DNA of 64,000 nt, from positions 124,001 through 188,000 of the IMG/VR virus record IMGVR_UViG_3300023184_004198, one strand, 5' to 3'. A program made the translations under genes and the position numbers. A model generated the notes under the pieces. That model worked only from the letters and a program-made list of their open reading frames with translations. It had not been told where the DNA came from and searched no databases. Positions 8,837-61,177 of the stretch are shown one piece after another (the stretch's first letter is position 1; each line of letters begins with the position of its first letter).

Positions 8837-9303
8837 GTGGGCCAGACCCAGCCCATGTTTTCAAGTTGATGTATCCATGAAAACACAGGTGCGTTGAACT
8901 GCAACTGCCATCGACCATTCCACCCCAGGTGTGTTTCCCCGGCTTGAACAGGATTCGGCTGGGGATTTTGCTGACTGTACCAGGGTTCAGGAAACACTGG
9001 CTCATAAGTGGCCAGCCAGTTGAAACGTGGCACATGTATGCTGTTGATTCTAATGGCACCAATGGTGATGTACTTGTCTAGCCCAAGGTGTGGTATGCAG
9101 TCTGAATCTTGTTTGTTCACAAAATCAACGATCACACTGTGTGGACCAGCAGTCAACAGTTGATCAAATCTCAAAGTAGTTGGCCGGCTTAGTTGCATGC
9201 GATCAACTGCATGATCAACGCCGTACATGATTTCAGGCACACTGCTGTGATATGTGGGCATGACATCTATTTCAATTTCAGTTTGATATTTTTTTGTATC
9301 CAT
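8833..9303 (-). CDS. Hypothetical protein coupled to the radical SAM gene
   Basis: Overlaps the 3' end of the radical SAM ORF; start at MDTKK. Confidence 0.65.
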
Positions 9304-10639
9304 ATTGTTCCAAGAAGTCAGTCCATTCTGGATAGTAGTCTCTGGCATCTAACTCGCAGTGGTGATCCCATTTGTTGAGCCAGCCAACCAGTTCTGTTTT
9401 GAGTGCTTCGGCATTGGGCAGTTCGGGCACTTGAATCATCTTGTACACACTGTTGAGTTCGTTGTACAGGTTAAGGGCATTCTTGCCATACTCTCTGCTT
9501 TGTGGCATGTCTGGATGTTGGTCTTGTTTGATATATGTACTCAATTTGTCAAGCACACGCTCGTATTCGGCAAAATAACTTTGTCTAATGTCCAAGGGCA
9601 ATGCGGCCGCCCGCAAATACGCAGGATTCCAGCAGGTGTTGTTTTCTGTGATGATGTTGCTGTCAAACATCCACTCCGTGAGTGCAGGAAATGTGGGCAC
9701 AGTGAGTGCAGTGATGGTGGGCTTCAAACACACGCAGAATGTTTCACTTTGATGCGACAAGAATGAACGGATGTTGTTCCAGTACAGTTCTTTGTCCAGA
9801 CCCTGGCGAATGTAAAAATTGTTATCTGACACAGACTCAATGCTGATGTCAATGTCTGCTCGGAAGAATCGAGCAAACTTTTCAGCAATCTCTCGACTGT
9901 ATATGGTGCCGTTGGAGATCAAACTCACAGCAAAGTCAGTGCGATCATGCTCAATAAAGAAATCCAAGAACTGTTCCAGTCTGGGACTCATAAAAGGCTC
10001 GCCGCCCATGAAGTGAACACTGCGCAGGTTCTTCATGCCCAGCAGTTCGTTCAGGAACCGTTGCCAAACTTCTTCATCATCCATCCAGTTCATTCTGGTA
10101 TGGTAGTCTTCTTTGCTGAGTATGCCCCAGATTTTGTATTTGGTTGCAATCTGTGTGCTGTAACTGGGGTTGCAATGTTTACAGTATAGGTTACATTCAT
10201 TGCCCATGTCAATATGCAGGTCCACAGGCATGCCATCGTAGTGCTCGTCCACGGCTTGACCAGATTGTTCACTGGTGAAAATATCATGGTGTGGGCTTTG
10301 TTCAAAACTTTGTTGAAAGTTTTGTTGGGTAAAGATAACACTGCGCCAATTGTGAGTGTTGCGATAACTGTCATTGCCATACTGTTCGTCTTGATAGCAG
10401 CCGGCACATTCAGCCAAAGGTTGGTCGCCCAGCATGGCAGCACGATAACGTTTCATTTTTTCACTGCGATACCACTCACGGATTGACGTGGTTTTGATAT
10501 TGGCTTTTACTTGTTCGGGTTGTTTGGCATAGCCATCGAACACAGGTGCTCGTTCACTGCAACACAGACCATAACTGCCGTCGTGGTAAAGTTGCATGTG
10601 GAACCAAGGCACATTACAGAATATTTTGGGATTTGGCAT
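9278..10639 (-). CDS. Radical SAM protein with N-terminal SPASM/Twitch-like domain
   Basis: CNLYCKHC, FMGGEP; N-terminal C..PW..CC..C..C; late hexamer 6 nt upstream. Confidence 0.9.
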   Translation of the reverse strand: MPNPKIFCNVPWFHMQLYHDGSYGLCCSERAPVFDGYAKQPEQVKANIKTTSIREWYRSEKMKRYRAAMLGDQPLAECAGCYQDEQYGNDSYRNTHNWRSVIFTQQNFQQSFEQSPHHDIFTSEQSGQAVDEHYDGMPVDLHIDMGNECNLYCKHCNPSYSTQIATKYKIWGILSKEDYHTRMNWMDDEEVWQRFLNELLGMKNLRSVHFMGGEPFMSPRLEQFLDFFIEHDRTDFAVSLISNGTIYSREIAEKFARFFRADIDISIESVSDNNFYIRQGLDKELYWNNIRSFLSHQSETFCVCLKPTITALTVPTFPALTEWMFDSNIITENNTCWNPAYLRAAALPLDIRQSYFAEYERVLDKLSTYIKQDQHPDMPQSREYGKNALNLYNELNSVYKMIQVPELPNAEALKTELVGWLNKWDHHCELDARDYYPEWTDFLEQYGYKKISN

Positions 10640-50520: not shown

Positions 50521-50807
50521 GATACTTACTTTTAACCTATTACAAAAAACCCGACGGCAAGATTGACGAAGTCATGGCCGTGGCCAAAAACTTGAAAAAA
50601 CGCGACATTGCAACTTGCAACGTCATACTTGACTTTAAAAAATTAGAAGTGATCAAAGCCAGTATGTCGGGCACAGATGTACCAAAAGATTTTGACCGCA
50701 TTGCAGGGTATTACCATCAACACTATGCTGCCACCATAGAGCGATTGTTCAACGAGAATGGCTACGAAGTTGAAGTCAACAAACCCCAACAAGATGCGGC
50801 TGGATGA
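50517..50807 (+). CDS. Hypothetical protein
   Basis: MRYLLLTYYKKPDGKIDE, coupled. Confidence 0.7.
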   Translation: MRYLLLTYYKKPDGKIDEVMAVAKNLKKRDIATCNVILDFKKLEVIKASMSGTDVPKDFDRIAGYYHQHYAATIERLFNENGYEVEVNKPQQDAAG

Positions 50808-51732
50808 TTTAGATGGTTTACACATTGAACTGACCAATCTGTGTACGTTGAAATGTCCAGGTTGCCTGAGAACACAGTTGATTAAAAAATGGCCTCGCCA
50901 TTGGAAAAATTACAGTTTAGATTTGGATGTTGTTGCAAAATTCTTAGACGTTGATTTGCAGGGCAAAACCATTACCTTGTGTGGCAACACAGGCGATTCT
51001 ATATATCATCCCAAGTTTCATGACTTTGTGGCATATTTTAAAAATCGCGGTGCCCAGCTTCGAGTGTTTACCAATGGTAGTTATCGCAATCAGTCTTGGT
51101 GGGACACCACTGTTTCTTATTTGGACAGCGCAGATACAGTGATTTTTAGCGTGGATGGTCTGCCAGAAAATTTTACACAATATCGAATCAATGCAGATTG
51201 GCAATCAATTTTGATTGGCATGCAGGCTTGTATACAAGCATCTTGCAAAACTGTGTGGAAATACATTCCGTTCAATTTCAATGAAAATGACATTGCTGCC
51301 GCAGAACAACTCAGTCAAAACATGGGCTTTGATGTTTTTAAAATTGAACAAAGCAGCAGATTTGACGAACGCAATGGAGTAGATTATCAGTTGATGTCTT
51401 TCATGCCCAGCGGCAATCAACACATAGATGCAAGATATCAACATCAAGCAGAATGGAAAAACTCAAGGCTCACAATCCAGATTGATCCTGTTTGCAATGA
51501 TCAAAGAAGTCATTACATTTCGGCCAACGGGTTTTACAGTCCCTGTTGTTTTGTATCTGACTATGCATTTTATTACAAGACAGAATTTGGTAAAAACAAA
51601 AAAATGTACAACATTGCAGACCGTACACTCACCGGGTTGTTTCAACAAACAGAATTCAATGAGTTTTACAATAATTTACACGATCACGCAGTTTGTCAAT
51701 TTAGTTGTCCCGCTACACAGGAAAGAAAATGA
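50794..51732 (+). CDS. Radical SAM protein with C-terminal Twitch-like domain
   Basis: CTLKCPGC, CGNTGD, FTNG, SVDG, PCC. Confidence 0.9.
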   Translation: MRLDDLDGLHIELTNLCTLKCPGCLRTQLIKKWPRHWKNYSLDLDVVAKFLDVDLQGKTITLCGNTGDSIYHPKFHDFVAYFKNRGAQLRVFTNGSYRNQSWWDTTVSYLDSADTVIFSVDGLPENFTQYRINADWQSILIGMQACIQASCKTVWKYIPFNFNENDIAAAEQLSQNMGFDVFKIEQSSRFDERNGVDYQLMSFMPSGNQHIDARYQHQAEWKNSRLTIQIDPVCNDQRSHYISANGFYSPCCFVSDYAFYYKTEFGKNKKMYNIADRTLTGLFQQTEFNEFYNNLHDHAVCQFSCPATQERK

Positions 51733-53819: not shown

Positions 53820-54339
53820 AGGGTTGCAATATCGTGACCTAGAAGGCATGATGAAGCCTACCATTCATGTGGATGAATTTAGTGGCAAAATGGGCGATGA
53901 TGAGGATATCATTGTGTTGAGTTTCTTTGTGCGTGACAAACAAGCAGCCAAAGACCTAGTGGCCTGGTTTGAAAAAGGCTATGATTTTGTACTGGATGCT
54001 GACCGCAGCCCAGGTGAAATCAAACCCAGCCGCTATTTGGTGTATGTGGAAATGCGTCGCCGCAGTGCTGCACCACAGTATGTGGCCGAATTGATTAATG
54101 ATTTAACTACACTCACAGAACATGAACCTGAAGATTGGATAATGCGATATAATAATCAAACACAGCCTTGGAGTGAAGAAGCATTTGCAAGCACTGTGCC
54201 GCTGACTCCAGATGAGTATCGTAGAACACACGAATCAGATTTGAATGAGTGGCGCACTGCCGCTGGGTTGCCTGTAAAACAGATTCACGAAACCCGGCCT
54301 GACATGCGGGCACTACAGGCTGCTGCTGGACTTATCTAA
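53770..54339 (+). CDS. Conserved hypothetical late protein
   Basis: IHVDEFSGKMG..FEKGYDFVLDAD; start uncertain. Confidence 0.75.
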   Translation: MHNKTYNKTSNPSRLLEGLQYRDLEGMMKPTIHVDEFSGKMGDDEDIIVLSFFVRDKQAAKDLVAWFEKGYDFVLDADRSPGEIKPSRYLVYVEMRRRSAAPQYVAELINDLTTLTEHEPEDWIMRYNNQTQPWSEEAFASTVPLTPDEYRRTHESDLNEWRTAAGLPVKQIHETRPDMRALQAAAGLI

Positions 54340-54847
54340 TCCATTCACAGTAGATTCTATTGTTGCTGTCCTGCTGTAAATCAGCAACACGGAATCCAAA
54401 CTGGTCAGCATATTGATGCAACCGTTCAGGAGTCCAGTCAAAAAAATCAATAGACTTGCATTGTTCATTGCCGTGGTCTTGACGTCCAGGATTGCAACGC
54501 CAGTATATTCTAGCATGCGGAGTCAGCAATTGAACCACATGATCAATTTGCTTTAATATTGTTTCCTCACTACCAAAATTGATACTGCCCAGGCAAAATG
54601 CCACATTAAATTGTATATTGCTTTCAAACTCTTCAATGGTGCATTTGTAGTCAGCCTGATCAAACGCAGGATCTATGCCGGTTAGATTGGCAATGCGTCC
54701 TCGAAACGGATTGGTGCCGCAGCCTACATCCAGCACTGATTCGCCTAGTTTTATTTTTTGGAGAAGTGCCCATCCAGAATATTCATATTGATCAATGTTT
54801 GAGTGCCAATGAGTGCTGAAATATTTGTCTAAGGTGTGTTGGTCCAT
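54332..54847 (-). CDS. Class I SAM-dependent methyltransferase
   Basis: VLDVGCG, GIDP, GSINFG. Confidence 0.88.
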   Translation of the reverse strand: MDQHTLDKYFSTHWHSNIDQYEYSGWALLQKIKLGESVLDVGCGTNPFRGRIANLTGIDPAFDQADYKCTIEEFESNIQFNVAFCLGSINFGSEETILKQIDHVVQLLTPHARIYWRCNPGRQDHGNEQCKSIDFFDWTPERLHQYADQFGFRVADLQQDSNNRIYCEWIR

Positions 54848-54863
54848 ATAATTAATTATACAC
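54847..54863. promoter_or_regulatory. Palindromic bidirectional late-promoter candidate
   Basis: TATAATTAATTATA; TAATTA at 54853-54858 is 5 nt from both divergent ATGs. Confidence 0.6.
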
Positions 54864-55439
54864 ATGCTTCCCAACAGAATATTTCTAACAGGCGTGCCCG
54901 GCTCACGCTGGTCAGGTATTGCACAAACACTAGAAACCATTCCAGGTTTTAATACCACAGACCGCACACCAGCACGTACATACAGTCATCATAGTTACAC
55001 AGGACACCAAGGTGCTTACTTTGGTCCAGGTATGGAACTGGAATGTAGATTAAATGACCAGTATATTGATGCGGCCTGGACTGAGCCTGGTGGCACACGA
55101 TTGATTAAAAGTCATGACTGGGCATATGTGTTGCCTCAAGTACAACATTATTTTCCCAAAGACTGGATCATGTTGGTGTATCGTCCAGACATGGCGTCAT
55201 ATGCATGGTGGCACGAAGCAGGCGGGTTTCAAATCAAATACCCTTGCTATAATGCTTACCAGGACAGTACAGGCATGTTGGCAGCCATAACAAGACAGAA
55301 TCAGTGCATACTTGAATATGCACACAGTCGTAATGCCACTTGGCATCACTTTACACCTGAATGGGTTGAAAGTACATTTGGACATAAGGTTGAAATTAAG
55401 AAGACTTTTCCAGATATTTTAGTAACGGTGCTCAAATGA
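54864..55439 (+). CDS. Sulfotransferase-like P-loop protein
   Basis: IFLTGVPGSRWS, LIKSH, MLVYR. Confidence 0.5.
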   Translation: MLPNRIFLTGVPGSRWSGIAQTLETIPGFNTTDRTPARTYSHHSYTGHQGAYFGPGMELECRLNDQYIDAAWTEPGGTRLIKSHDWAYVLPQVQHYFPKDWIMLVYRPDMASYAWWHEAGGFQIKYPCYNAYQDSTGMLAAITRQNQCILEYAHSRNATWHHFTPEWVESTFGHKVEIKKTFPDILVTVLK

Positions 55440-55666
55440 GAGATCATGTTTGGTATATCAAATACGCCAGTGCCATAACCATATTATGTGCAATGGTGTT
55501 ACACGTTTTGGGCATCACGCCCTGGAACAGTTTTGTGCAAATGATCGGAGCCGCTGGCTGGATCTATGTGGGCTATCGCTGGAATGAGCGAGCTCTGATG
55601 TTGAATTTCTTGCCCCAGTTCTTCATTATTATCCCGGGGCTGGTGTACATGTATTTTTTGCGATGA
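55436..55666 (+). CDS. Small membrane protein
   Basis: Two to three TM segments. Confidence 0.7.
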   Translation: MRDHVWYIKYASAITILCAMVLHVLGITPWNSFVQMIGAAGWIYVGYRWNERALMLNFLPQFFIIIPGLVYMYFLR

Positions 55667-56064
55667 AACGCATACTGATCATGGGTTTGAGTGGTACAGG
55701 CAAGACCACACTGGCTAAGTCACTGCAAACCAAATTGAACTCTGTACATTTTAATGCAGATCAAGTTAGAGGTATGTTCAATGACTGGGACTTCAGTGCA
55801 GAAGGACGCATACGTCAAAGTCAACGCATGCGAGATCTTGCTGATGCAGCCCAGGCTGACTATGTGATTGCTGATTTTATTGCACCATTGAATCGCATGC
55901 GAGTAATATTTGACGCTGATTTTACCATATGGATGGACACTGTACAGCGCAGTCGGTTTGCAGACACTGACCAAATGTTTGTACCTCCTACTAGTTGGGA
56001 ATATGACATGAGGATCACCTCATTTGACTACAATATAGATAATATCTTAAAGGAACTACCATGA
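55663..56064 (+). CDS. Short adenylylsulfate kinase (CysC)-like protein
   Basis: GLSGTGKTT, NADQVR, DFIAP. Confidence 0.75.
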   Translation: MKRILIMGLSGTGKTTLAKSLQTKLNSVHFNADQVRGMFNDWDFSAEGRIRQSQRMRDLADAAQADYVIADFIAPLNRMRVIFDADFTIWMDTVQRSRFADTDQMFVPPTSWEYDMRITSFDYNIDNILKELP

Positions 56065-57026
56065 AACGATTACTCTTACTGTTATTAATGATTCCCATGA
56101 TGGCCCTGGCCTGGGAACCCAGCCGCCCAGTTACTGTGGTGATAGGCAATGCACCTGGTGCAGGCAATGAACTAGCATTTAGAAAACTGTCACAGATCAT
56201 CAATCGCACCAACAAAAAAATTACGTTTGTTGTTGAAAACCGTGCAGGCGCAGACAGCGTGATTGCAATGAATCACATGATGCAAGTATTGCCAGATGGG
56301 CATACCATTGCTGCTTTTAATCACATGAGCCAATATGTTACCCAGGACATTTGGCAGCGCGACATCAAAAAGTATGACTACAACACATTTGAGGATGTGC
56401 TTACCATAGGCAAAAGTCCCTTAGTGCTTGTTGCTATTTCCACCAGCGCAGTCAACACTCCAGATGAATTTGCTACACTGTTGCGTACCACACAACAACC
56501 CGTGTTTGTGGCTGTGGGGTCAGGCGCACATAGAATCACATTTGAGTATTTGATGCTGAAGACCGGGGGCAATAAAAACTTGGTTCGGCACATTGCTTTT
56601 AATGGGCCGGCACAGGCATTGCAAAGTGTTGCTAGTAGTGCAGGTGGCACAGAGTTTGGTATCATGCCCTTGACTGTGGCCCGTCCCTTGATCGAAGCAG
56701 GCCGGGTCAAAGCCATTGGCATCACTGGTGATCGAAAAATAGCGCAAATGCCAAATATCCCACTATTACGAAAGATCGCCCCGGGCATCAACATATTTGC
56801 TGCCTGGAACATTGTGTTGCCGCCACGCACTGATCGTGTGATTGTGGACTATTATGCGGATTTATTTGCTCGGGCTATAAATACTACAGAATACCAAGAA
56901 TGGATGGATCAAAACTTGGTATTTGTGGAAAGCCGAGAGTTAGATCCAGATGGTTTACGGCAACATGCCCAAGAACTACGCCGAACATTCCTACCCCTAG
57001 CAAACCAAATCAACCCCACCGAATAA
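56061..57026 (+). CDS. Tripartite tricarboxylate transporter substrate-binding protein (Bug/TctC)
   Basis: Signal peptide, P.RPVTVV..APG, VENRAGA, GRVKAIG. Confidence 0.88.
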   Translation: MKRLLLLLLMIPMMALAWEPSRPVTVVIGNAPGAGNELAFRKLSQIINRTNKKITFVVENRAGADSVIAMNHMMQVLPDGHTIAAFNHMSQYVTQDIWQRDIKKYDYNTFEDVLTIGKSPLVLVAISTSAVNTPDEFATLLRTTQQPVFVAVGSGAHRITFEYLMLKTGGNKNLVRHIAFNGPAQALQSVASSAGGTEFGIMPLTVARPLIEAGRVKAIGITGDRKIAQMPNIPLLRKIAPGINIFAAWNIVLPPRTDRVIVDYYADLFARAINTTEYQEWMDQNLVFVESRELDPDGLRQHAQELRRTFLPLANQINPTE

Positions 57027-57065
57027 CATAAATATTCGTGTATCGATACACTTAAGGAGAATTCC

Positions 57066-57761
57066 ATGGATGCAAAACAATTTGTTAAAAAACTAGTTGA
57101 GGACAATCAAGCATTGTTCAAGGCCAGCCAGTATAACGTTAAAGAATACTTCGACAGCAAACCTGCTCAAGAAGAATTAGTCGAGCACTTTGTTGGCCGC
57201 ATGGTCAACGAGCGCATGAACATGGTGGAAATTGCCAATGCAGTTGCTGCCATGCCTGCTGACACCCCAACAGAAGAACTAGAACTGTTGACACGTCAGG
57301 CACAAGACGAAGCCCGTCACTTCCGCATGGTCAAAGAAGTCATTGAGCACATGACTGGTCAGCCGCTAGACGTAGCCGCTGCCATCGCTGCTGAGGCTGC
57401 CAAACCCACTGCCAAAGGTGCTGGCTTGTTGGCCAAGTACGAAGCAGAAACTGATCCTGTTGCCCTGGCAGCATATCAGTTGGTTGCTGAAGGCCGCGCT
57501 GAGGCTGTATGGAACCAAATGGCTGACTGCATTGAAGACGAGTTCATCTCTACTAGTTACGCCAAGATTGCCAAAGACGAAGGTTTCCACGCCAACATTG
57601 GTGGTTGGAAACTGGAAAAATTGGTTCAAGACGAAGCCACACAACAACGTGTTGAAGTGTTGGTCGCTAAAATGCGCCGGGACTTGTATGACATTTCATG
57701 CCGGAACACCACTGCTGCTGCGGCAGGCAAGCAACTAGTGGCCGAAGCCTACGGTTGGTAA
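57066..57761 (+). CDS. Ferritin-like diiron protein
   Basis: E..DEARH and E..DEGFH; TAAATA and AAGGAG upstream. Confidence 0.85.
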   Translation: MDAKQFVKKLVEDNQALFKASQYNVKEYFDSKPAQEELVEHFVGRMVNERMNMVEIANAVAAMPADTPTEELELLTRQAQDEARHFRMVKEVIEHMTGQPLDVAAAIAAEAAKPTAKGAGLLAKYEAETDPVALAAYQLVAEGRAEAVWNQMADCIEDEFISTSYAKIAKDEGFHANIGGWKLEKLVQDEATQQRVEVLVAKMRRDLYDISCRNTTAAAAGKQLVAEAYGW

Positions 57762-58294
57762 TGAAGATAGGACTCACACAACGAGTCCTGTTTCACCAAG
57801 ATCGGGCGTATGATTCCTTGGAGCACTCGTGGTACGAGTTTTTGCAAGGACATACGCTCATTCCAATTGCAAACAGACTTCCTGTAAACATCACAGATCT
57901 AGACGCACTAATCATCACAGGTGGCGATGATCATGTCATACGCAACCAAGTAGAACATGAACTAGCAGATTGGATGTTTTTGCTCAATCTTCCTGTGTTA
58001 GGTATTTGTCATGGATGCCAATTCCTAACACAGAAACTGGGTGGCACAGTTGTGCCCGTTGACGATCACATGGACAGTTATCATGAAGTTGATTATCACG
58101 GTGAATCGCACCTGGTCAACAGTTATCATTCTCTGCGTATAGAACACCCACCCCCAGGCGCCACAGTGCTGGCACGTGACCCCGATGGCTATGTAGAATC
58201 CTGGATCCAGGGACGCACCGCTGGCATCATGTGGCATCCTGAGCGCATGTCACAACCTTGGATACCCCAAGAAATACAAAACTTACTAAATTGA
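57761..58294 (+). CDS. Class I glutamine amidotransferase-like (peptidase C26/PuuD-like)
   Basis: ITGGD, LGICHG, NSYH, WHPE. Confidence 0.9.
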   Translation: MKIGLTQRVLFHQDRAYDSLEHSWYEFLQGHTLIPIANRLPVNITDLDALIITGGDDHVIRNQVEHELADWMFLLNLPVLGICHGCQFLTQKLGGTVVPVDDHMDSYHEVDYHGESHLVNSYHSLRIEHPPPGATVLARDPDGYVESWIQGRTAGIMWHPERMSQPWIPQEIQNLLN

Positions 58295-59292
58295 ATCGAC
58301 TGGTTTATTATCCCACAGGCAGTTACGGTACATTTATGCAGTGGCTGTGCAATACTCCCAATATTTCTTCAGCAGAAGATTTACCATTCCATGTTGATGG
58401 CAACAGTCATCAATATGTGCTGAGTGATCAATTCAAATTATTAGTGTCAGATCAAGACACTGAAGAATTTGTTTTGACTAAAAATTCTACTGTGGTATCC
58501 TGTATTCCTCCAGTAGACCACAACAGCAAACTTTACAACAAACATGAACAACAAGATTTTTATTACCAGACCACTTTACAACACATAGAATATTTTGATA
58601 AACGATTGGTAAAAATATTGGTACTTTATCCAACTGAAACTAGTAAAATATGGTGGTGGCATAACAACTGCAAAAAAGTATTTTACACCGAAGAAATGTT
58701 TGATAGAAAAATCAAACATGCTCATCCTGATATCCCTTGGTTGACCACAATAGATCCTGTACAACGTGCTAGGGTGCAAATGAATTATTATCAAAGTCGT
58801 GCATGGTATCAAACATTGTTAGAAAATTTTAACTGCGTAAATGCACATCAACTCAGGCCTGGGCAACTGCGCACAGTGATGGCGCAAGCAATACATTACG
58901 AAACATTTGACAGTTTGAGTCATTGGGCGCAATTGCCCCCACAATTGCCCAATGTTAAATTTGTGTCTTTAGATCAACTACGAGATTGCACAAAGCAAAC
59001 AGTACAAAACATATTTGAATATTTCAAAGTGCAATCTAATTTGCCATTGGATTTTGTTTTGGATCAGTGGACTATGCGACAAACAACTCGCAATAGAGAC
59101 GTCGAACACAGTAAAATTATAAACTGCATAGTTAACAATCAAACCTGTGATTGGAGCAATTTGAATTTTGATTTGTTTGACGAAGTGTACCTTTATTATG
59201 CATTAAAATATCAACACAATATCTTATTAGACACAGACAGCATAGATTGTTTGCCAACCAACTCACAGGATCTACTGCGCCTGGCCCGCTAA
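58291..59292 (+). CDS. Hypothetical protein, possibly sulfotransferase-like (AT-rich)
   Basis: YYPTGSYGTF N-terminal loop; TTG start overlaps the upstream stop. Confidence 0.55.
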   Translation: MNRLVYYPTGSYGTFMQWLCNTPNISSAEDLPFHVDGNSHQYVLSDQFKLLVSDQDTEEFVLTKNSTVVSCIPPVDHNSKLYNKHEQQDFYYQTTLQHIEYFDKRLVKILVLYPTETSKIWWWHNNCKKVFYTEEMFDRKIKHAHPDIPWLTTIDPVQRARVQMNYYQSRAWYQTLLENFNCVNAHQLRPGQLRTVMAQAIHYETFDSLSHWAQLPPQLPNVKFVSLDQLRDCTKQTVQNIFEYFKVQSNLPLDFVLDQWTMRQTTRNRDVEHSKIINCIVNNQTCDWSNLNFDLFDEVYLYYALKYQHNILLDTDSIDCLPTNSQDLLRLAR

Positions 59293-59300
59293 ATAATCAC

Positions 59301-59759
59301 ATGTGGATTTTACACTTCTTACCGGACACACTCATACTTTGGATCTGCAACACGGTGTTGTTGGCAGGCATCTTGCTGACTGTGACAGCATTTTTTATCA
59401 AACGCATACCTGTCATAAACCAATACCGGATACCCGCACAAGTTCTGGGCATCGCACTGCTGGTGATAGGCGTATACTGGCGCGGTGGCTATGCTATCGA
59501 AATGGAATGGCGAGAACGTGTGGCCGAAGTAGAAGCCAAGGTAGCGGCTGCTGAAGCACAGAGCCGAGAAGCCAACACAAAAATTGTAACCAAAGTTGTT
59601 ACAAAAACACAGGTTATACGAACTCGTGGCGAAACTATCACCAAATACATTGACCGGGAAATTGTACAGTATGATACAAAGTTTGCCCCAGGTGGCCAGT
59701 GTGAAATACCACAAGAATTTATCAAAGCACACAACAGTGCAGCAGAGGCACCCAAATGA
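59301..59759 (+). CDS. Putative i-spanin (Rz-like)
   Basis: N-terminal TMs, coiled coil, C-terminal CEIPQEFIKAHN. Confidence 0.65.
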   Translation: MWILHFLPDTLILWICNTVLLAGILLTVTAFFIKRIPVINQYRIPAQVLGIALLVIGVYWRGGYAIEMEWRERVAEVEAKVAAAEAQSREANTKIVTKVVTKTQVIRTRGETITKYIDREIVQYDTKFAPGGQCEIPQEFIKAHNSAAEAPK

Positions 59760-60292
59760 AAATTAACGACATTATTACAGAAGCCAAATCGGCACATCCA
59801 CGACAGGCTGCAAAAGCCATAGCCATGAGAAATGCGGGCATAAAACCCAAGCACATGGGCGAGAGTGCAGAGTTGGCTGAAGAGTTTGATCTCATTGAAT
59901 CAATCATTGAACGCCTGGCCGAACACAACGGTGTGGATTCTGAAGTGATCTGGGAAGATTTAGAAACACTGTCAGAAGATGAACTGTATGTGTTTGCTGT
60001 GACATCAGAGCCCATCATGGAAAGTGAAGCCTGGCAAAAAGCCAACAACCGTGACAAAACAGATGGCATGAGTCGCAAAGCAGTGAAAACTTATCGCAGA
60101 GAACATCCAGGCAGTAAACTACAAACAGCAGTTACTACCAAGCCTAGTAAACTCAAGCGTGGTAGCAAGGCCAGCAAGCGTAGATCAAGTTATTGCAGTC
60201 GCAGTCGTGGACAGATGAAGATGCACAGCATTTCGTGTTCCAAGACTCCAGACAAAGCAATATGCAAAGCACGTCGTCGTTGGAACTGCTGA
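59756..60292 (+). CDS. Protein with acidic middle and basic Cys-containing C-terminal domain
   Basis: MKINDIITEA; C-terminal KRRSSYCSR...ARRRWNC. Confidence 0.75.
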   Translation: MKINDIITEAKSAHPRQAAKAIAMRNAGIKPKHMGESAELAEEFDLIESIIERLAEHNGVDSEVIWEDLETLSEDELYVFAVTSEPIMESEAWQKANNRDKTDGMSRKAVKTYRREHPGSKLQTAVTTKPSKLKRGSKASKRRSSYCSRSRGQMKMHSISCSKTPDKAICKARRRWNC

Positions 60293-60552
60293 TGCGAGTA
60301 CTACTGTTATCATTGCTACTCACCGGTTGCAGTACTGTGGTACCTGTCACTGCCAAGTTTCCTGAAGCACCGGGTAACATAGCAATGACCCCTTGTCCAC
60401 AACTGCAAAAATTAGCAGAAGATGCCAAGTTAAGTGACATCACAAAAACTGTCACAGTAAACTATGGCACGTATTATGAATGTGCTGTGAAAACAGATGC
60501 CTGGATTGAGTGGTATCAAAAACAACAACAAATATTCAACAACATAAAATAA
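60292..60552 (+). CDS. Putative o-spanin lipoprotein (Rz1-like)
   Basis: Lipobox LTGC, Pro-rich, PCPQL and YECA. Confidence 0.7.
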   Translation: MRVLLLSLLLTGCSTVVPVTAKFPEAPGNIAMTPCPQLQKLAEDAKLSDITKTVTVNYGTYYECAVKTDAWIEWYQKQQQIFNNIK

Positions 60553-60562
60553 GGAGCCACAA

Positions 60563-61177
60563 ATGGAACTAACAATCGGTCAACTAAAACAAATGGTGCC
60601 CGGCATACCCTATGCTGAACACTGGTATGAAGCATTAGACCAATTATTACCCGACTATGAGATCAACACACCCGAACGCATTGCTGCCTTTATAGCACAG
60701 TGCGCACATGAGTCAGGCGGATTCCGGTTCATCAAAGAAAACTTGAACTACAAAGCAGAAAGTCTGCGTAAAATTTTTAGCAAGTATTTTCCCACAGATG
60801 AACTAGCACAGGCCTATGCTAAAAAGCCTGAAATGATTGCCAACAGAGTTTACGCTAATCGCATGGGCAACGGTGACGAGCACTCCGGTGACGGGTATCG
60901 CTACTGCGGACGTGGGCTGATCCAACTTACTGGCAAAAGCAATTACGAAAACTTTGCTGCCAGTTTGGAAATTTCCCCAGAAGAAGCCGCAGAGTACCTG
61001 GGCACATTTGAAGGTGCCGCACAAAGTGCCTGCTGGTTCTGGGAAAGCAACAACTTGAATGTGGAAGCCGACGCCGGCGACATCAAGAAAATGACCAAGA
61101 AGATCAATGGTGGTTACATTGGTTTGGAAGATCGTATCAAGCACTACGAACACGCATTACACATCATGGGAGCATAA
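60563..61177 (+). CDS. Endolysin, glycoside hydrolase family 19
   Basis: AAFIAQCAHES, ENLNY, YCGRGLIQLTG, INGG..GLEDR. Confidence 0.92.
   Translation: MELTIGQLKQMVPGIPYAEHWYEALDQLLPDYEINTPERIAAFIAQCAHESGGFRFIKENLNYKAESLRKIFSKYFPTDELAQAYAKKPEMIANRVYANRMGNGDEHSGDGYRYCGRGLIQLTGKSNYENFAASLEISPEEAAEYLGTFEGAAQSACWFWESNNLNVEADAGDIKKMTKKINGGYIGLEDRIKHYEHALHIMGA

What the first reader, a model, noticed from the sequence alone, without database searches (positions are those of the whole stretch)
54332..59292. Compact enzyme-transporter cluster: MTase, sulfotransferase-like, APS-kinase-like, TctC, diiron ferritin-like, GATase
Seen: eight genes, seven co-directional and mostly overlapping, all with late hexamers upstream or coupled. 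Motifs are DVGCG; GVPGSRWS/IKSH; GLSGTGKT; Bug signature; twin DExxH; GICHG/WHPE. Known: APS kinase supplies PAPS to sulfotransferases, diiron ferritin-like proteins oxidise substrates, and TctC binds carboxylates in the periplasm. Inference: an undescribed phage pathway that makes, modifies or senses a small carboxylate or sulfated metabolite. An orphan TctC (no TctA/B here) could receive a signal or plug into host transporters.
Basis: partly seen in the sequence, partly recalled or inferred. Interest (0 to 1): 0.75.

Follow-up and report, generated by a model that had tools for sequence, protein, structure and literature searches.

The report
Jumbo-phage sulfotransferase, transporter, diiron gene island
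The eight genes are real and recur together in hundreds of uncultured aquatic giant-phage genomes, forming an undescribed accessory gene island that most likely takes up a carboxylate and modifies some target by sulfation, methylation and oxidation, although neither the target nor the product is known.

Summary
All eight ORFs exist, all six quoted motifs are present, and family, profile or fold evidence supports seven of the eight gene calls. The window lies in a 212.6-kb fragment of an uncultured freshwater jumbo phage whose virion proteins resemble those of PA5oct and Atu_ph07.

- Among 84 loci anchored on the diiron gene (FER; 4 duplicates), MT is in 79, GAT in 80 and ST in 77.
- Among 50 loci anchored on the sulfotransferase-like gene (ST), MT is next to it in 49 and TctC or TctA is present in 27.
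- FER, MT and ST also travel together into low-GC islands of two Oxalobacteraceae genomes.

Refinements:
- The island has two sub-modules, MT/ST plus a transporter part, and FER–GAT with its own TAAATA promoter-like site.
- Some relatives carry TctA with a TctC-like protein, so the receptor is orphan only in this record.
- ST has a sulfotransferase fold, and KIN is a truncated APS-kinase relative.
- FER is a phage-specific, very conserved diiron family.

The chemistry remains inference. PAPS-dependent sulfation linked to carboxylate uptake is the best reading (about 0.4). I found no published description of it. Interest is moderate to high.

The parts
54332..54847 (-). MT: small class-I SAM methyltransferase-like protein of 171 aa. 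The ORF extends to 54967, but Met41 is the probable start.
   Evidence: Motif I VLDVGCG, GIDP and LGSINF are invariant in 21 homologues (A3). Pfam gives Methyltransf_23 below its cut-off. The Janthinobacterium homologue passes Methyltransf_11. MT lies next to ST in 49 of 50 ST-anchored loci.
54847..54860 (.). Perfect palindrome TATAATTAATTATA that fills the 16-nt MT/ST divergent gap and reads TATAAT on both strands.
   Evidence: Sequence read. Function is inferred.
54864..55439 (+). ST: sulfotransferase-fold protein of 191 aa from a new, mostly viral family.
   Evidence: No Pfam hit. hhalign against 23 bona fide Sulfotransfer_3 domains gives 68% probability, E 4.6e-5, over 123 columns, with the 5'-PSB loop, the K-x-H region and the 3'-PB arginine in register; controls score under 1%. 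The AF2 model has pLDDT 91. The top 8 structural matches are all sulfotransferases at Z 7.9-10.0, while P-loop kinases score 7.9 or less. Atlas neighbours carry Sulfotransfer_1/3.
55436..55666 (+). DUF6552: membrane protein of 76 aa with 2-3 hydrophobic segments.
   Evidence: Pfam DUF6552, E 3.9e-12. Its Atlas clusters are mostly viral. It is present in 29 of 50 ST-anchored loci. It overlaps both neighbours by 4 nt.
55663..56064 (+). KIN: truncated APS-kinase-like P-loop kinase of 133 aa.
   Evidence: Pfam APS_kinase, 31.3 bits against a cut-off of 21.1. 21 of the 22 best PDB hits of the family profile are APS kinases or APS-kinase domains, best E 2.4e-11. LDGDxxR corresponds to FNADQVR and FISP to FIAP, and the lid half is shortened. 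Relatives carry a fusion to an NMNAT-like HxGH nucleotidyltransferase.
56061..57026 (+). TctC: periplasmic solute receptor of the Bug/TTT family, 321 aa, with an N-terminal signal-peptide-like leader.
   Evidence: PF03401, E 1.5e-25. The leader MKRLLLLLLMIPMMALA/WEP and the NxPGAGNE and GxxAH loops are conserved in 33 homologues. No TctA was found in this record. Nine relatives carry TctA plus a TctC-like protein in the same slot.
57029..57051 (+). Promoter-like TAAATA hexamer (57029-57034) and 14-nt palindrome GTGTATCGATACAC (57038-57051), upstream of the FER ribosome-binding site.
   Evidence: TAAATA is enriched 13-18 fold upstream of genes genome-wide. It lies upstream of FER in 62 of 66 distinct related loci, against 7% of random windows. 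Sequence read.
57066..57761 (+). FER: ferritin-like diiron-carboxylate protein of 231 aa from a phage-specific, highly conserved family.
   Evidence: E49, E82xxH85, E142 and E172xxH175 are invariant in 30 sequences. The AF2 model has pLDDT 94. Structural neighbours are split between haem-oxygenase-like diiron enzymes and ferritin-like oxygenases, Z 12-16. No Pfam family passes its cut-off. Median identity is 74%, against 34-62% for neighbouring genes. Only 106 clusters at 50% identity were found among 1.84 billion representatives.
57761..58294 (+). GAT: class-I glutamine amidotransferase / peptidase C26-type protein of 177 aa.
   Evidence: Peptidase_C26 and GATase both pass their cut-offs. C83, H159 and E161 are invariant (A5). 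The best PDB hits are Lin1909 and GMP synthase subunit A. The best NCBIfam hit is gamma-glutamyl-CDP-amidate hydrolase, at 54 bits against a cut-off of 250. Its start shares one base with the FER stop.
58291..59292 (+). ST2: protein of about 333 aa with an N-terminal YYPTGSYGTF loop, possibly a second sulfotransferase-like enzyme.
   Evidence: No Pfam hit. Atlas feature neighbours carry Sulfotransfer_1, but with few shared features. hhalign against Sulfotransfer_3 gives only 10%. It is found in 10-12 related loci. Its TTG start overlaps the GAT stop.

Best explanation
This is a modular accessory gene island, conserved in a large clade of uncultured aquatic jumbo phages. It most likely couples uptake of a carboxylate to PAPS-dependent group transfer and further tailoring inside the infected cell.

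Proposed mechanism (steps 1-5 are inferred):
1. A first operon, ST-DUF6552-KIN-TctC, is translationally coupled and preceded by a TATAAT-type site. It exports TctC to the host periplasm.
2. TctC captures a carboxylate and hands it to the host's TctAB. In some relatives the phage supplies its own TctA.
3. KIN, an APS-kinase relative, turns host APS into PAPS.
4. ST, and perhaps ST2, transfer the sulfuryl group to an acceptor. The divergently transcribed MT methylates it.
5. A second unit, FER-GAT-ST2, is driven by the phage's TAAATA-type promoter and runs on into the lysis genes. It adds a diiron oxidation or hydroxylation (FER), and either amide-nitrogen transfer or gamma-glutamyl hydrolysis (GAT).

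Shown here: gene identities at fold or family level, operon-like coupling, and conserved co-occurrence. Inferred: every catalytic step, the donor (PAPS), the acceptor, and that the two sub-modules act on the same molecule.
For: Co-occurrence:
- Among 84 FER-anchored loci (four are duplicates: the window's own stretch and three repeats), MT is present in 79, GAT in 80, ST in 77, TctC in 36 and KIN in 26.
- Gene order is shuffled between loci, yet the genes stay clustered while the island moves relative to PhoH, the virion genes and the lysis genes.
- Among 50 ST-anchored loci with at least 5 kb on both sides, MT is present in 49, TctC in 20, TctA in 7, FER in 28 and GAT in 24.
- FER, MT and ST, with a cupin and the P-loop protein f4, occur together in low-GC islands of Janthinobacterium and Massilia genomes. 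Those genomes gave no match to the one phage virion protein queried, and a sulfatase-family gene sits beside the island.

Gene identities:
- KIN belongs to the APS-kinase family.
- ST has a sulfotransferase fold with its signature loops aligned.
- The two genes lie in one run of 4-nt overlapping genes.
- TctC keeps a secretion leader and the Bug-family loops in 33 homologues.
- Relatives replace TctC with TctA plus a TctC-like protein.

Expression:
- FER has a conserved TAAATA site in 62 of 66 loci.
- Contigs from an RNA library match ST, TctC (200 of 200 bases) and FER. This is weak evidence, because DNA carry-over is not excluded.

Established precedent (from my own knowledge): APS kinase paired with a sulfotransferase is a known functional pair, as in NodPQ/NodH and RaxPQ/RaxST.
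Against: - No enzymatic step has been tested.
- ST matches no curated sulfotransferase model, and the profile-profile probability is only 68%.
- KIN lacks the lid half of APS kinase. It has NAD in place of DGD and FIAP in place of FISP.
- KIN is present in only 26 of 84 FER-anchored loci and 6 of 50 ST-anchored loci, so it is dispensable.
- No ATP sulfurylase (CysD-type) was found in the record.
- The two sub-modules often occur apart. For example, MT-ST-TctC occurs without FER within 10 kb in about 8 loci.
- The two sub-modules have different promoter-like sites.
- Most of the compared loci come from related phages, so part of the synteny may be shared descent and not functional linkage.
- The structural neighbours of FER do not indicate a substrate.
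Confidence: 0.4

Rival explanations
1. The region is a hot spot of independent auxiliary genes. It is a hyperplastic region where unrelated accessory genes accumulate. MT/ST/TctC and FER/GAT have separate functions and are adjacent only through shared ancestry of the phages.
For: - The sub-modules separate: FER is absent within 10 kb in 22 of 50 ST-anchored loci.
- The two units have different promoter-like elements.
- Accessory content is highly variable between loci: cupin, f4, f5, GDSL esterases, an HExxH protein, a nuclease.
- Most compared loci come from one phage clade.
Against: - FER, MT, ST, f4 and a cupin were co-transferred into two bacterial genomes.
- The genes stay clustered despite shuffled order and a changing position in the genome.
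- ST, DUF6552, KIN and TctC are translationally coupled, as are FER, GAT and ST2.
Confidence: 0.25
2. The island makes another 3'-phosphonucleotide-activated donor instead of PAPS, in the manner of the Campylobacter O-methyl phosphoramidate (MeOPN) pathway. There a C26-type hydrolase (Cj1417), a cytidylyltransferase (Cj1416) and an APS-kinase-like kinase (Cj1415) make CDP-phosphoramidate 3'-phosphate. That donor is then transferred and methylated.
For: - The best NCBIfam match of GAT is gamma-glutamyl-CDP-amidate hydrolase, E 2.4e-14, over nearly the full profile.
- In at least 16 related loci (family 22) KIN is fused to an HxGH nucleotidyltransferase.
- A methyltransferase and PAPS-fold transferases are present.
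- The pathway composition is taken from PMC11800397.
Against: - The GAT score is 54 bits against a cut-off of 250.
- No glutamine-kinase-type PPDK_N domain was found in the record.
- The fused domain scores best against NMN adenylyltransferases, not cytidylyltransferases.
- The window's KIN lacks that domain.
- The record's two cytidylyltransferase-like matches lie outside the cluster; the stronger is fused to a sugar-isomerase-type cupin.
Confidence: 0.12
3. The same enzymes modify a macromolecule and not an imported metabolite. Candidates are sulfation and methylation of host envelope polysaccharide, or tyrosine sulfation of a protein, for example to block superinfection or to decorate virions. 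TctC would then be an unrelated nutrient-uptake gene.
For: - The closest structural matches of ST are tyrosylprotein sulfotransferases, Z 9.5-10.
- Related loci carry SGNH/GDSL esterases, a 2OG-oxygenase-like protein (f5) and cupins, which are typical of glycan or protein tailoring.
- A sugar-nucleotide-type gene lies elsewhere in the genome.
- FER-GAT-ST2 appears to be co-transcribed with the lysis genes, which implies late expression.
Against: - A TTT component lies directly downstream of ST in many loci.
- No glycosyltransferase or polysaccharide-export gene is in the cluster.
- ST, KIN, FER and GAT have no secretion signals visible in the sequence.
Confidence: 0.15
4. The island serves nucleotide or NAD-related metabolism, or counter-defence. 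The kinase(-NMNAT) unit and its partners would rebuild or alter a nucleotide cofactor or signal.
For: - The fused domain of KIN-CT resembles NMN adenylyltransferase.
- The same fusion sits beside a COG3236/NADAR-type gene in Casjensviridae phages.
- The bacterial islands include a 2H phosphoesterase, and in Massilia also a 5'-nucleotidase domain.
Against: - The window has the kinase only.
- The kinase matches APS kinases specifically.
- PADLOC returns nothing beyond a P-loop-only hit.
- Nothing links FER, GAT, MT or TctC to NAD.
Confidence: 0.08

Closest known systems
APS kinase + PAPS-dependent sulfotransferase gene pairs (for example rhizobial NodPQ/NodH and Xanthomonas RaxPQ/RaxST; recalled from my own knowledge)
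   Same: An APS-kinase-family gene and a sulfotransferase-fold gene lie in one operon. The sulfotransferase signature loops (5'-PSB, 3'-PB) are aligned.
   Different: - The kinase is truncated (133 aa, no lid).
- No ATP sulfurylase is present.
- The transferase belongs to a new, mostly viral family without a Pfam match.
- The pair is encoded by a phage and joined to a TTT receptor, a methyltransferase, a diiron protein and a GATase.
Tripartite tricarboxylate transporter (TctABC) / Bug-family receptors
   Same: TctC passes the PF03401 cut-off and has a secretion-type leader. Relatives carry a full-length TctA.
   Different: - It is encoded by a phage.
- No TctA or TctB was found in this record.
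- The first binding loop reads NxPGAGNE.
- The substrate is unknown.
- The only earlier mention I found of a TTT gene in viruses is a tctA domain hit in SUP05 viral contigs (PMC4164917).
Ferritin-like diiron-carboxylate oxygenases (aldehyde-deformylating oxygenase, PaaC, R2, MiaE) and haem-oxygenase-like diiron enzymes (CADD, UndA)
   Same: All-helical bundle, an invariant E/ExxH/E/ExxH ligand set, and structural Z 12-16.
   Different: - No family model passes its cut-off.
- Sequence identity to any solved structure is 19% or less.
- The family is almost confined to phages and unusually conserved.
- The overall fold match does not discriminate between the two diiron classes.
Campylobacter jejuni MeOPN donor pathway (Cj1415-Cj1418)
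   Same: A C26-type GATase, an APS-kinase-like kinase, a methyltransferase and, in relatives, a nucleotidyltransferase domain.
   Different: No glutamine kinase is present. All scores lie far below the equivalog cut-offs. The nucleotidyltransferase domain is NMNAT-like and is absent from the window.
Phage auxiliary metabolic genes for nutrient uptake (for example cyanophage PstS; recalled from my own knowledge)
   Same: A phage-encoded periplasmic solute receptor that presumably plugs into a host transporter.
   Different: The transporter family is different (TTT), and the receptor is embedded in an operon of tailoring enzymes instead of standing alone.

Membership tests
APS kinase (PF01583) | Family model score above the curated cut-off | tested here: met
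   31.3 bits against 21.1. 21 of the 22 best PDB hits of the family profile are APS kinases or APS-kinase domains.
APS kinase (PF01583) | Walker A loop, DGD motif and FISP motif | tested here: inconclusive
   GLSGTGKT is present. DGD reads NAD, with the last Asp invariant. FISP reads F(I/V)AP. The Arg and Phe residues aligned to the APS-binding positions are kept.
APS kinase (PF01583) | Full-length domain with the lid region (about 175-200 aa) | tested here: not met
   The protein is 133 aa, and matches cover only model positions 5-89 of 152.
APS kinase (PF01583) | Phosphorylation of the 3'-OH of APS | not testable with these tools
   Needs an enzyme assay.
PAPS-dependent sulfotransferase superfamily | Match to a curated sulfotransferase family model | tested here: not met
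   No Pfam or NCBIfam sulfotransferase hit for ST or ST2. PF13469 finds nothing in the whole record.
PAPS-dependent sulfotransferase superfamily | Profile-profile homology with the 5'-PSB loop and the 3'-PB arginine in register | tested here: inconclusive
   ST against 23 Sulfotransfer_3 domains gives 68% probability, E 4.6e-5, over 123 columns. PGSKWS aligns with PRSGTT and R107 with the RDP arginine. Controls score under 1%. ST2 reaches only 10%.
PAPS-dependent sulfotransferase superfamily | Sulfotransferase fold | tested here: met
   For ST, the top 8 VIA-align matches are all sulfotransferases (Z 7.9-10.0), with P-loop kinases from rank 9 at Z 7.9 or less. Foldseek results are weak and mixed. 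ST2 was not modelled.
PAPS-dependent sulfotransferase superfamily | PAPS binding and sulfuryl transfer | not testable with these tools
   Needs biochemistry.
TctC / Bug solute receptors (PF03401) | Family model above its cut-off | tested here: met
   90.7 bits against 27.
TctC / Bug solute receptors (PF03401) | Secretion signal for the periplasm | tested here: met
   The hydrophobic leader ending ALA/WEP is conserved in 33 homologues. This was read from the sequence; no signal-peptide predictor was available.
TctC / Bug solute receptors (PF03401) | Cognate TctA/TctB membrane components | tested here: not met
   No TctA in the 212.6-kb record, which is 61% complete. TctA plus a TctC-like protein is present in 9 related loci, with a possible TctB-like protein in 3 of them.
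Ferritin-like diiron-carboxylate proteins | Two E...ExxH ligand sets on a four-helix core | tested here: met
   E49, E82xxH85, E142 and E172xxH175 are invariant. They lie on helices 35-62, 69-97, 131-155 and 159-186 of a model with pLDDT 94.
Ferritin-like diiron-carboxylate proteins | Membership of a named subfamily (R2, AurF, MiaE, DUF455, COQ7, ADO) | tested here: not met
   All Pfam and NCBIfam hits are below their cut-offs. There is no sequence-level PDB hit.
Class-I glutamine amidotransferase / peptidase C26 | Family models above their cut-offs and a Cys-His-Glu triad | tested here: met
   51.7 against 20.5 and 48.7 against 22.8. C83, H159 and E161 are invariant.
gamma-glutamyl-CDP-amidate hydrolase (NF045546, Cj1417 type) | Equivalog score above the cut-off | tested here: not met
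   53.9 bits against 250.
MeOPN donor pathway | Glutamine kinase and phosphoglutamine cytidylyltransferase present | tested here: not met
   No PPDK_N domain in the record. Cytidylyltransferase-like genes occur only elsewhere in the genome.
Class-I SAM methyltransferase | Motif I and a family model | tested here: inconclusive
   VLDVGCG is invariant. Methyltransf_23 scores 17.1 against 27. The Janthinobacterium homologue scores 29.7 against 21.2 for Methyltransf_11.

The most novel reading that the evidence does not exclude
A widespread clade of aquatic jumbo phages encodes a self-contained route. A phage-specified TTT receptor, or in some relatives a whole transporter, imports an environmental carboxylate. 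The infected cell then converts it into a new metabolite, such as a sulfated or sulfamoylated antimetabolite or a signal, that acts on the host or on competitors. The conversion would use PAPS made by a minimal phage APS kinase, new-family sulfotransferases, a methyltransferase, a phage-specific diiron oxygenase and an amidotransferase.
Probability: 0.15. Interest if true: 0.85.

Novelty: new variant of a known kind. Interest (0 to 1): 0.55.

Why it matters
If the island works as proposed, it would be the first phage-encoded sulfation system. It would also be the first functional link between a phage-borne TTT solute receptor and intracellular tailoring enzymes.

The gene families are abundant. 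About 2,500 FER, 5,200 ST and 1,600 TctC clusters at 90% identity occur in public metagenomes. Near-identical DNA occurs in lakes, ponds and some marine samples collected from 2017 to 2025.

FER is more conserved than most neighbouring genes compared, PhoH and two virion proteins included, yet it belongs to no described diiron subfamily. That makes it a good target for enzyme discovery.

The Janthinobacterium and Massilia islands, together with recently isolated Janthinobacterium jumbophages (PMC13573597), may offer a culturable way in.

Tried and rejected
- No nucleotide match, and few or no protein matches, in GenBank phages for the cluster, FER, TctC or ST. No cultured close relative exists in that collection.
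- Sequence-profile searches of the PDB with FER, ST and MT gave nothing significant.
- I tried to assign FER to either the haem-oxygenase-like or the ferritin-like diiron class by fold. Foldseek, VIA-align, the AFDB clusters and the Atlas all give mixed neighbours. I rely on the ligand pattern instead.
- The deep HMM search for cellular FER relatives found only 106 clusters. Two distant relatives had uninformative contexts.
- FER was not found in 400 sampled Burkholderiales genomes apart from Massilia, and ST was not found in 400 sampled Pseudomonadota genomes apart from Massilia. Bacterial context is therefore limited to two islands.
- The MeOPN lead was followed and downgraded.
- The idea that KIN-CT makes a complete PAPS synthase, or NAD, could not be tested.
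- PADLOC found no defence-system membership.
- Literature searches found no description of this cluster.
- DUF6552 as a SemiSWEET/PnuC-like transporter was an idea from its sequence only. The Atlas gave no support.
- T4's TATAAATA as the 'late hexamer' occurs at chance level. The real enriched motif is TAAATA.
- Structure prediction and fold search were temporarily unavailable.

Full report
**What is there.** The window is bases 124001-188000 of a 212.6-kb IMG/VR virus record that CheckV rates 61% complete. The region 54332-59292 holds eight ORFs.

| Gene | Coordinates | Family evidence |
|---|---|---|
| MT | 54332-54847, minus strand | Class-I methyltransferase motif I, VLDVGCG. Pfam below its cut-off. 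The bacterial homologue passes Methyltransf_11. |
| ST | 54864-55439 | No Pfam hit (see below) |
| DUF6552 | 55436-55666 | Small membrane protein, Pfam E 3.9e-12 |
| KIN | 55663-56064 | APS_kinase, 31.3 bits against 21.1 |
| TctC | 56061-57026 | PF03401, 90.7 bits against 27 |
| FER | 57066-57761 | No family above its cut-off (see below) |
| GAT | 57761-58294 | Peptidase_C26 and GATase, both above their cut-offs |
| ST2 | 58291-59292 | No Pfam hit |

Family alignments and the DNA move three starts.
- MT begins at 54847.
- GAT begins at 57761 and shares one base with the FER stop.
- ST2 probably begins at 58291 on a TTGA overlap.
- ST, DUF6552, KIN and TctC are linked by ATGA overlaps.

Independent lake and freshwater metagenomes contain identical contigs across four of the five gene junctions. 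A pond contig about 97% identical spans the fifth, TctC-FER. The arrangement is therefore not an assembly artefact.

**Regulatory signals.** The hexamer TAAATA is enriched 13-18 fold in the 60 nt upstream of genes across this genome. T4's TATAAATA is not enriched.

Around the cluster, plus-strand TAAATA lies at three places:
- 57029, which is 37 nt before the FER start;
- 56878, inside TctC;
- 59290, just before the spanin-like gene that follows ST2.

A TAAATA lies upstream of FER in 62 of 66 distinct related loci, against 7% of random 120-nt windows.

The 16-nt gap between MT and ST is almost filled by a perfect palindrome, TATAATTAATTATA. It reads TATAAT on both strands and gives the best sigma-70-like match in the region.

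The cluster therefore looks like two transcription units with different promoter types, plus the divergent MT. This is inference; nothing was measured. A salt-marsh RNA library contains contigs matching ST, TctC (200 of 200 bases) and FER. DNA carry-over cannot be excluded.

**Is the neighbourhood conserved?** Yes.

A scan of IMG/VR with FER found 348 relatives. I examined 84 loci: the best 80, the window's own stretch, and three repeats of loci already in the set. MT occurs in 79, GAT in 80, ST in 77, TctC in 36, KIN in 26 and DUF6552 in 23.

I clustered all ORFs of these loci. The recurrent island reads:

MT< | FER> GAT> [TctC, or TctA plus a TctC-like protein] ST> f5> f4> [cupin] [KIN or KIN-CT] [SGNH esterases]

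Gene order is shuffled between loci. The position of the island relative to PhoH, two virion genes and the lysis cassette also changes.

The reciprocal scan was anchored on ST. In 50 loci with at least 5 kb on each side, the counts were MT 49, DUF6552 29, FER 28, GAT 24, f4 23, TctC 20, TctA 7 and KIN 6.

Two tight pairs emerge:
- MT/ST, often followed directly by a TTT component;
- FER/GAT.

About eight loci have MT-ST-TctC without FER within 10 kb.

Outside phages, FER is rare. It was found in only 5 of the genome-collection records, and in none of 400 other sampled Burkholderiales genomes.

In Janthinobacterium sp. UMAB-56 and Massilia atriviolacea SOD, FER sits in a low-GC island. The island also holds a cupin, f4, MT, ST, a sulfatase-family protein and a 2H phosphoesterase. 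The one phage virion protein queried gave no match in those genomes. Co-transfer of genes from both sub-modules is the best argument that they work together.

**The individual proteins.**

*KIN.* The family profile's best PDB matches are almost all APS kinases or APS-kinase domains (21 of the first 22), best E 2.4e-11. The alignment equates LDGDxxR with LNADDVR, GFSxEER with DFSEEGR, and FVSP with FVAP. It covers only the N-terminal half. KIN is thus a truncated APS-kinase relative.

In at least 16 related loci (family 22) the kinase is fused to a nucleotidyltransferase domain carrying GRWQPWHxGH and ISATKIR. That domain scores best against archaeal-type NMN adenylyltransferases. The same fusion occurs in cultured Casjensviridae phages such as Xylella phages Sano, Salvo and Bacata. 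The kinase alone occurs in Ralstonia jumbo phages, where it is annotated as APS kinase.

*ST.* It matches no curated family. Three independent lines place it in the sulfotransferase fold.
- Atlas neighbours carry Sulfotransfer_1/3.
- hhalign against 23 genuine Sulfotransfer_3 domains, taken from Burkholderiales genomes, gives 68% probability and E 4.6e-5 over 123 columns. The P-loop-like PGSKWS, the KSH region and the invariant R107 fall on the 5'-PSB loop, the K-x-P region and the 3'-PB arginine. Seven unrelated families score below 1%. Two P-loop families, f4 and KIN, match only over the P-loop at 58% and 44%.
- A model with pLDDT 91 has sulfotransferases as its eight best matches. These include TPST1 at Z 10.0, TPST2, the olefin-synthase ST domain, Stf9, Stf1 and NDST1. 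P-loop kinases follow from rank 9 at Z 7.9 or less. Foldseek alone is weak and mixed.

The ST family has about 5,200 clusters at 90% identity in metagenomes. All of the best 120 listed are unannotated.

*ST2.* The evidence is weak only.

*FER.* E49, E82xxH85, E142 and E172xxH175 are invariant in 30 sequences. They lie on four long helices of a model with pLDDT 94. This is the canonical diiron-carboxylate ligand set.

Fold searches give comparable scores to two groups:
- haem-oxygenase-like diiron enzymes: CADD, UndA and the TenA fold;
- ferritin-like oxygenases: ADO-like proteins, PaaC and R2.

The subclass and the substrate therefore remain open.

FER is among the most conserved genes of the neighbourhood. 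Its median identity is 74%, against 62% for PhoH, 51% for GAT and about 35% for MT and ST; only DUF6552 (79%, in 15 loci) is higher. It forms only 106 clusters at 50% identity among 1.84 billion representatives.

*GAT.* It has an invariant Cys-His-Glu triad. Its best solved relatives are Lin1909 and GMP synthase subunit A. Its best NCBIfam match is the Cj1417-type gamma-glutamyl-CDP-amidate hydrolase, but far below the cut-off.

*TctC.* All 33 homologues keep a secretion-type leader and two glycine-rich loops. No TctA was found in this record.

Nine related loci carry a full TctA (E 1.3e-88), followed by a protein that hhalign relates to TctC at 97.8% probability. In three of these loci a 117-aa hydrophobic protein follows, which could stand in for TctB.

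**Interpretation.** The most economical reading is a sulfation-centred tailoring island tied to carboxylate uptake.
- TctC delivers a ligand through the host's TTT permease, or through the phage's own.
- KIN raises PAPS from host APS.
- ST, and possibly ST2, transfer the sulfuryl group, and MT methylates.
- FER and GAT add oxidation and nitrogen chemistry.

Only the fold and family assignments, the coupling and the co-occurrence are shown here. Every catalytic step, and the identity of the acceptor, is inferred.

I give this reading 0.4. The rivals are as follows.

| Rival | Confidence |
|---|---|
| Hot spot of unrelated auxiliary genes | 0.25 |
| Macromolecular target, such as envelope glycan or protein tyrosine (supported by the TPST-like fold and by esterase and oxygenase genes in relatives) | 0.15 |
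| MeOPN-like donor, not PAPS (the pathway components are given in PMC11800397; weakened by the absence of a glutamine kinase) | 0.12 |
| Nucleotide or NAD-related role | 0.08 |

PADLOC gives no link to known defence systems.

**Context and novelty.** The virion proteins beside the island resemble those of PA5oct, Atu_ph07 and other jumbo myoviruses. Related contigs reach 354 kb. The DNA recurs in lake, pond and some marine metagenomes.

The two bacterial islands, and the abundance of the Bug family in Burkholderiales (the latter from my own knowledge), hint at betaproteobacterial hosts. This is not established.

I found no paper describing this island. The nearest mentions are tctA as a putative auxiliary gene in SUP05 viruses (PMC4164917), and newly isolated Janthinobacterium jumbophages whose text does not mention these genes (PMC13573597).

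I rate it a new variant of a known kind. The known kinds are phage auxiliary gene clusters and APS-kinase/sulfotransferase pairs. The new elements are two new protein families (ST and FER) and a phage-borne TTT component.

Noticed in passing
window 54847-54860: A perfect 14-nt palindrome, TATAATTAATTATA, almost fills the 16-nt gap between the divergent MT and ST starts. It reads TATAAT in both directions and leaves only 7-11 nt to each start codon, so the transcripts may be nearly leaderless.
   Followed up: partly
window 57029-57059; whole genome: TAAATA is the hexamer enriched upstream of genes in this phage (13-18 fold). Before FER it is followed by the palindrome GTGTATCGATACAC, a possible operator or hairpin. 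TAAATA is conserved upstream of FER in 62 of 66 related loci.
   Followed up: partly
L055:12366-13172 and at least 15 other related loci; Xylella phage Bacata, L093:5004-5744: Fusion protein of an APS-kinase-like domain with an NMNAT-like nucleotidyltransferase (GRWQPWHxGH, ISATKIR). It also occurs in cultured Casjensviridae phages of Xylella, Stenotrophomonas and Xanthomonas, beside a COG3236/NADAR-type gene. Its product is unknown; candidates are PAPS, a CoA-like compound or an NAD-like compound.
   Followed up: partly
L086:2200-10300 (Janthinobacterium sp. UMAB-56); L087:700-10300 (Massilia atriviolacea SOD): Low-GC chromosomal islands that combine MT, ST, a sulfatase-family protein, a 2H phosphoesterase, FER, a cupin and f4. 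Massilia adds a glutamine cyclotransferase fused to a 5'-nucleotidase domain. The one phage virion protein queried (vs1) was not found in these genomes.
   Followed up: partly
L008:9246-12129, L011, L030: Phage loci with TctA (483 aa), a divergent TctC-like protein (f39) and a 117-aa hydrophobic protein that could be a TctB analogue. Together these would make a near-complete phage-encoded TTT transporter.
   Followed up: partly
related loci, for example L040:10840-11511 (f5), L067:3299-3958 (f4), L068:6290-6958 (cupin), L036:6004-6582 (f19): Further island families that are absent from the window: a protein with an HxD...H motif like 2OG oxygenases (f5), a P-loop protein with GPQGSGNH and VRD motifs that is possibly another sulfotransferase-like enzyme (f4), a cupin, and an HExxH protein (f19).
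   Followed up: partly
window 59301-61177: A lysis cassette lies directly downstream and is apparently co-transcribed. It holds a spanin-like protein (phrog Rz-like), a DUF6321 protein, a small protein of unknown function at 60193-60552 (possibly the outer spanin) and a protein at 60563-61177 that I read as a chitinase-type lysozyme from its sequence (not scanned against any family).
   Followed up: no
window 50758-51732 and 9278-10639: Two radical SAM genes, one with a SPASM domain, lie upstream of the island beside a clamp loader and PhoH. Radical SAM genes also recur near the island in relatives.
   Followed up: no
G000:C1:55762-56562 (outside the window; locus L090:1450-2250): A fusion of a cytidylyltransferase-like domain with a mannose-6-phosphate-isomerase-type cupin, which suggests sugar-nucleotide metabolism elsewhere in the phage.
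   Followed up: no
L066:68-901, L031:6361-7179, L061:5530-6375: A secreted Serratia-type non-specific nuclease (DKGHMAPDGD, NMxPQ motifs) lies just upstream of MT in several related loci.
   Followed up: no
window 55436-55666: DUF6552 is a predominantly viral family of small membrane proteins. It is the best-conserved partner of the window-type ST (56-92% identity). One Atlas cluster of it carries a misleading automatic 'UbiE' name.
   Followed up: partly
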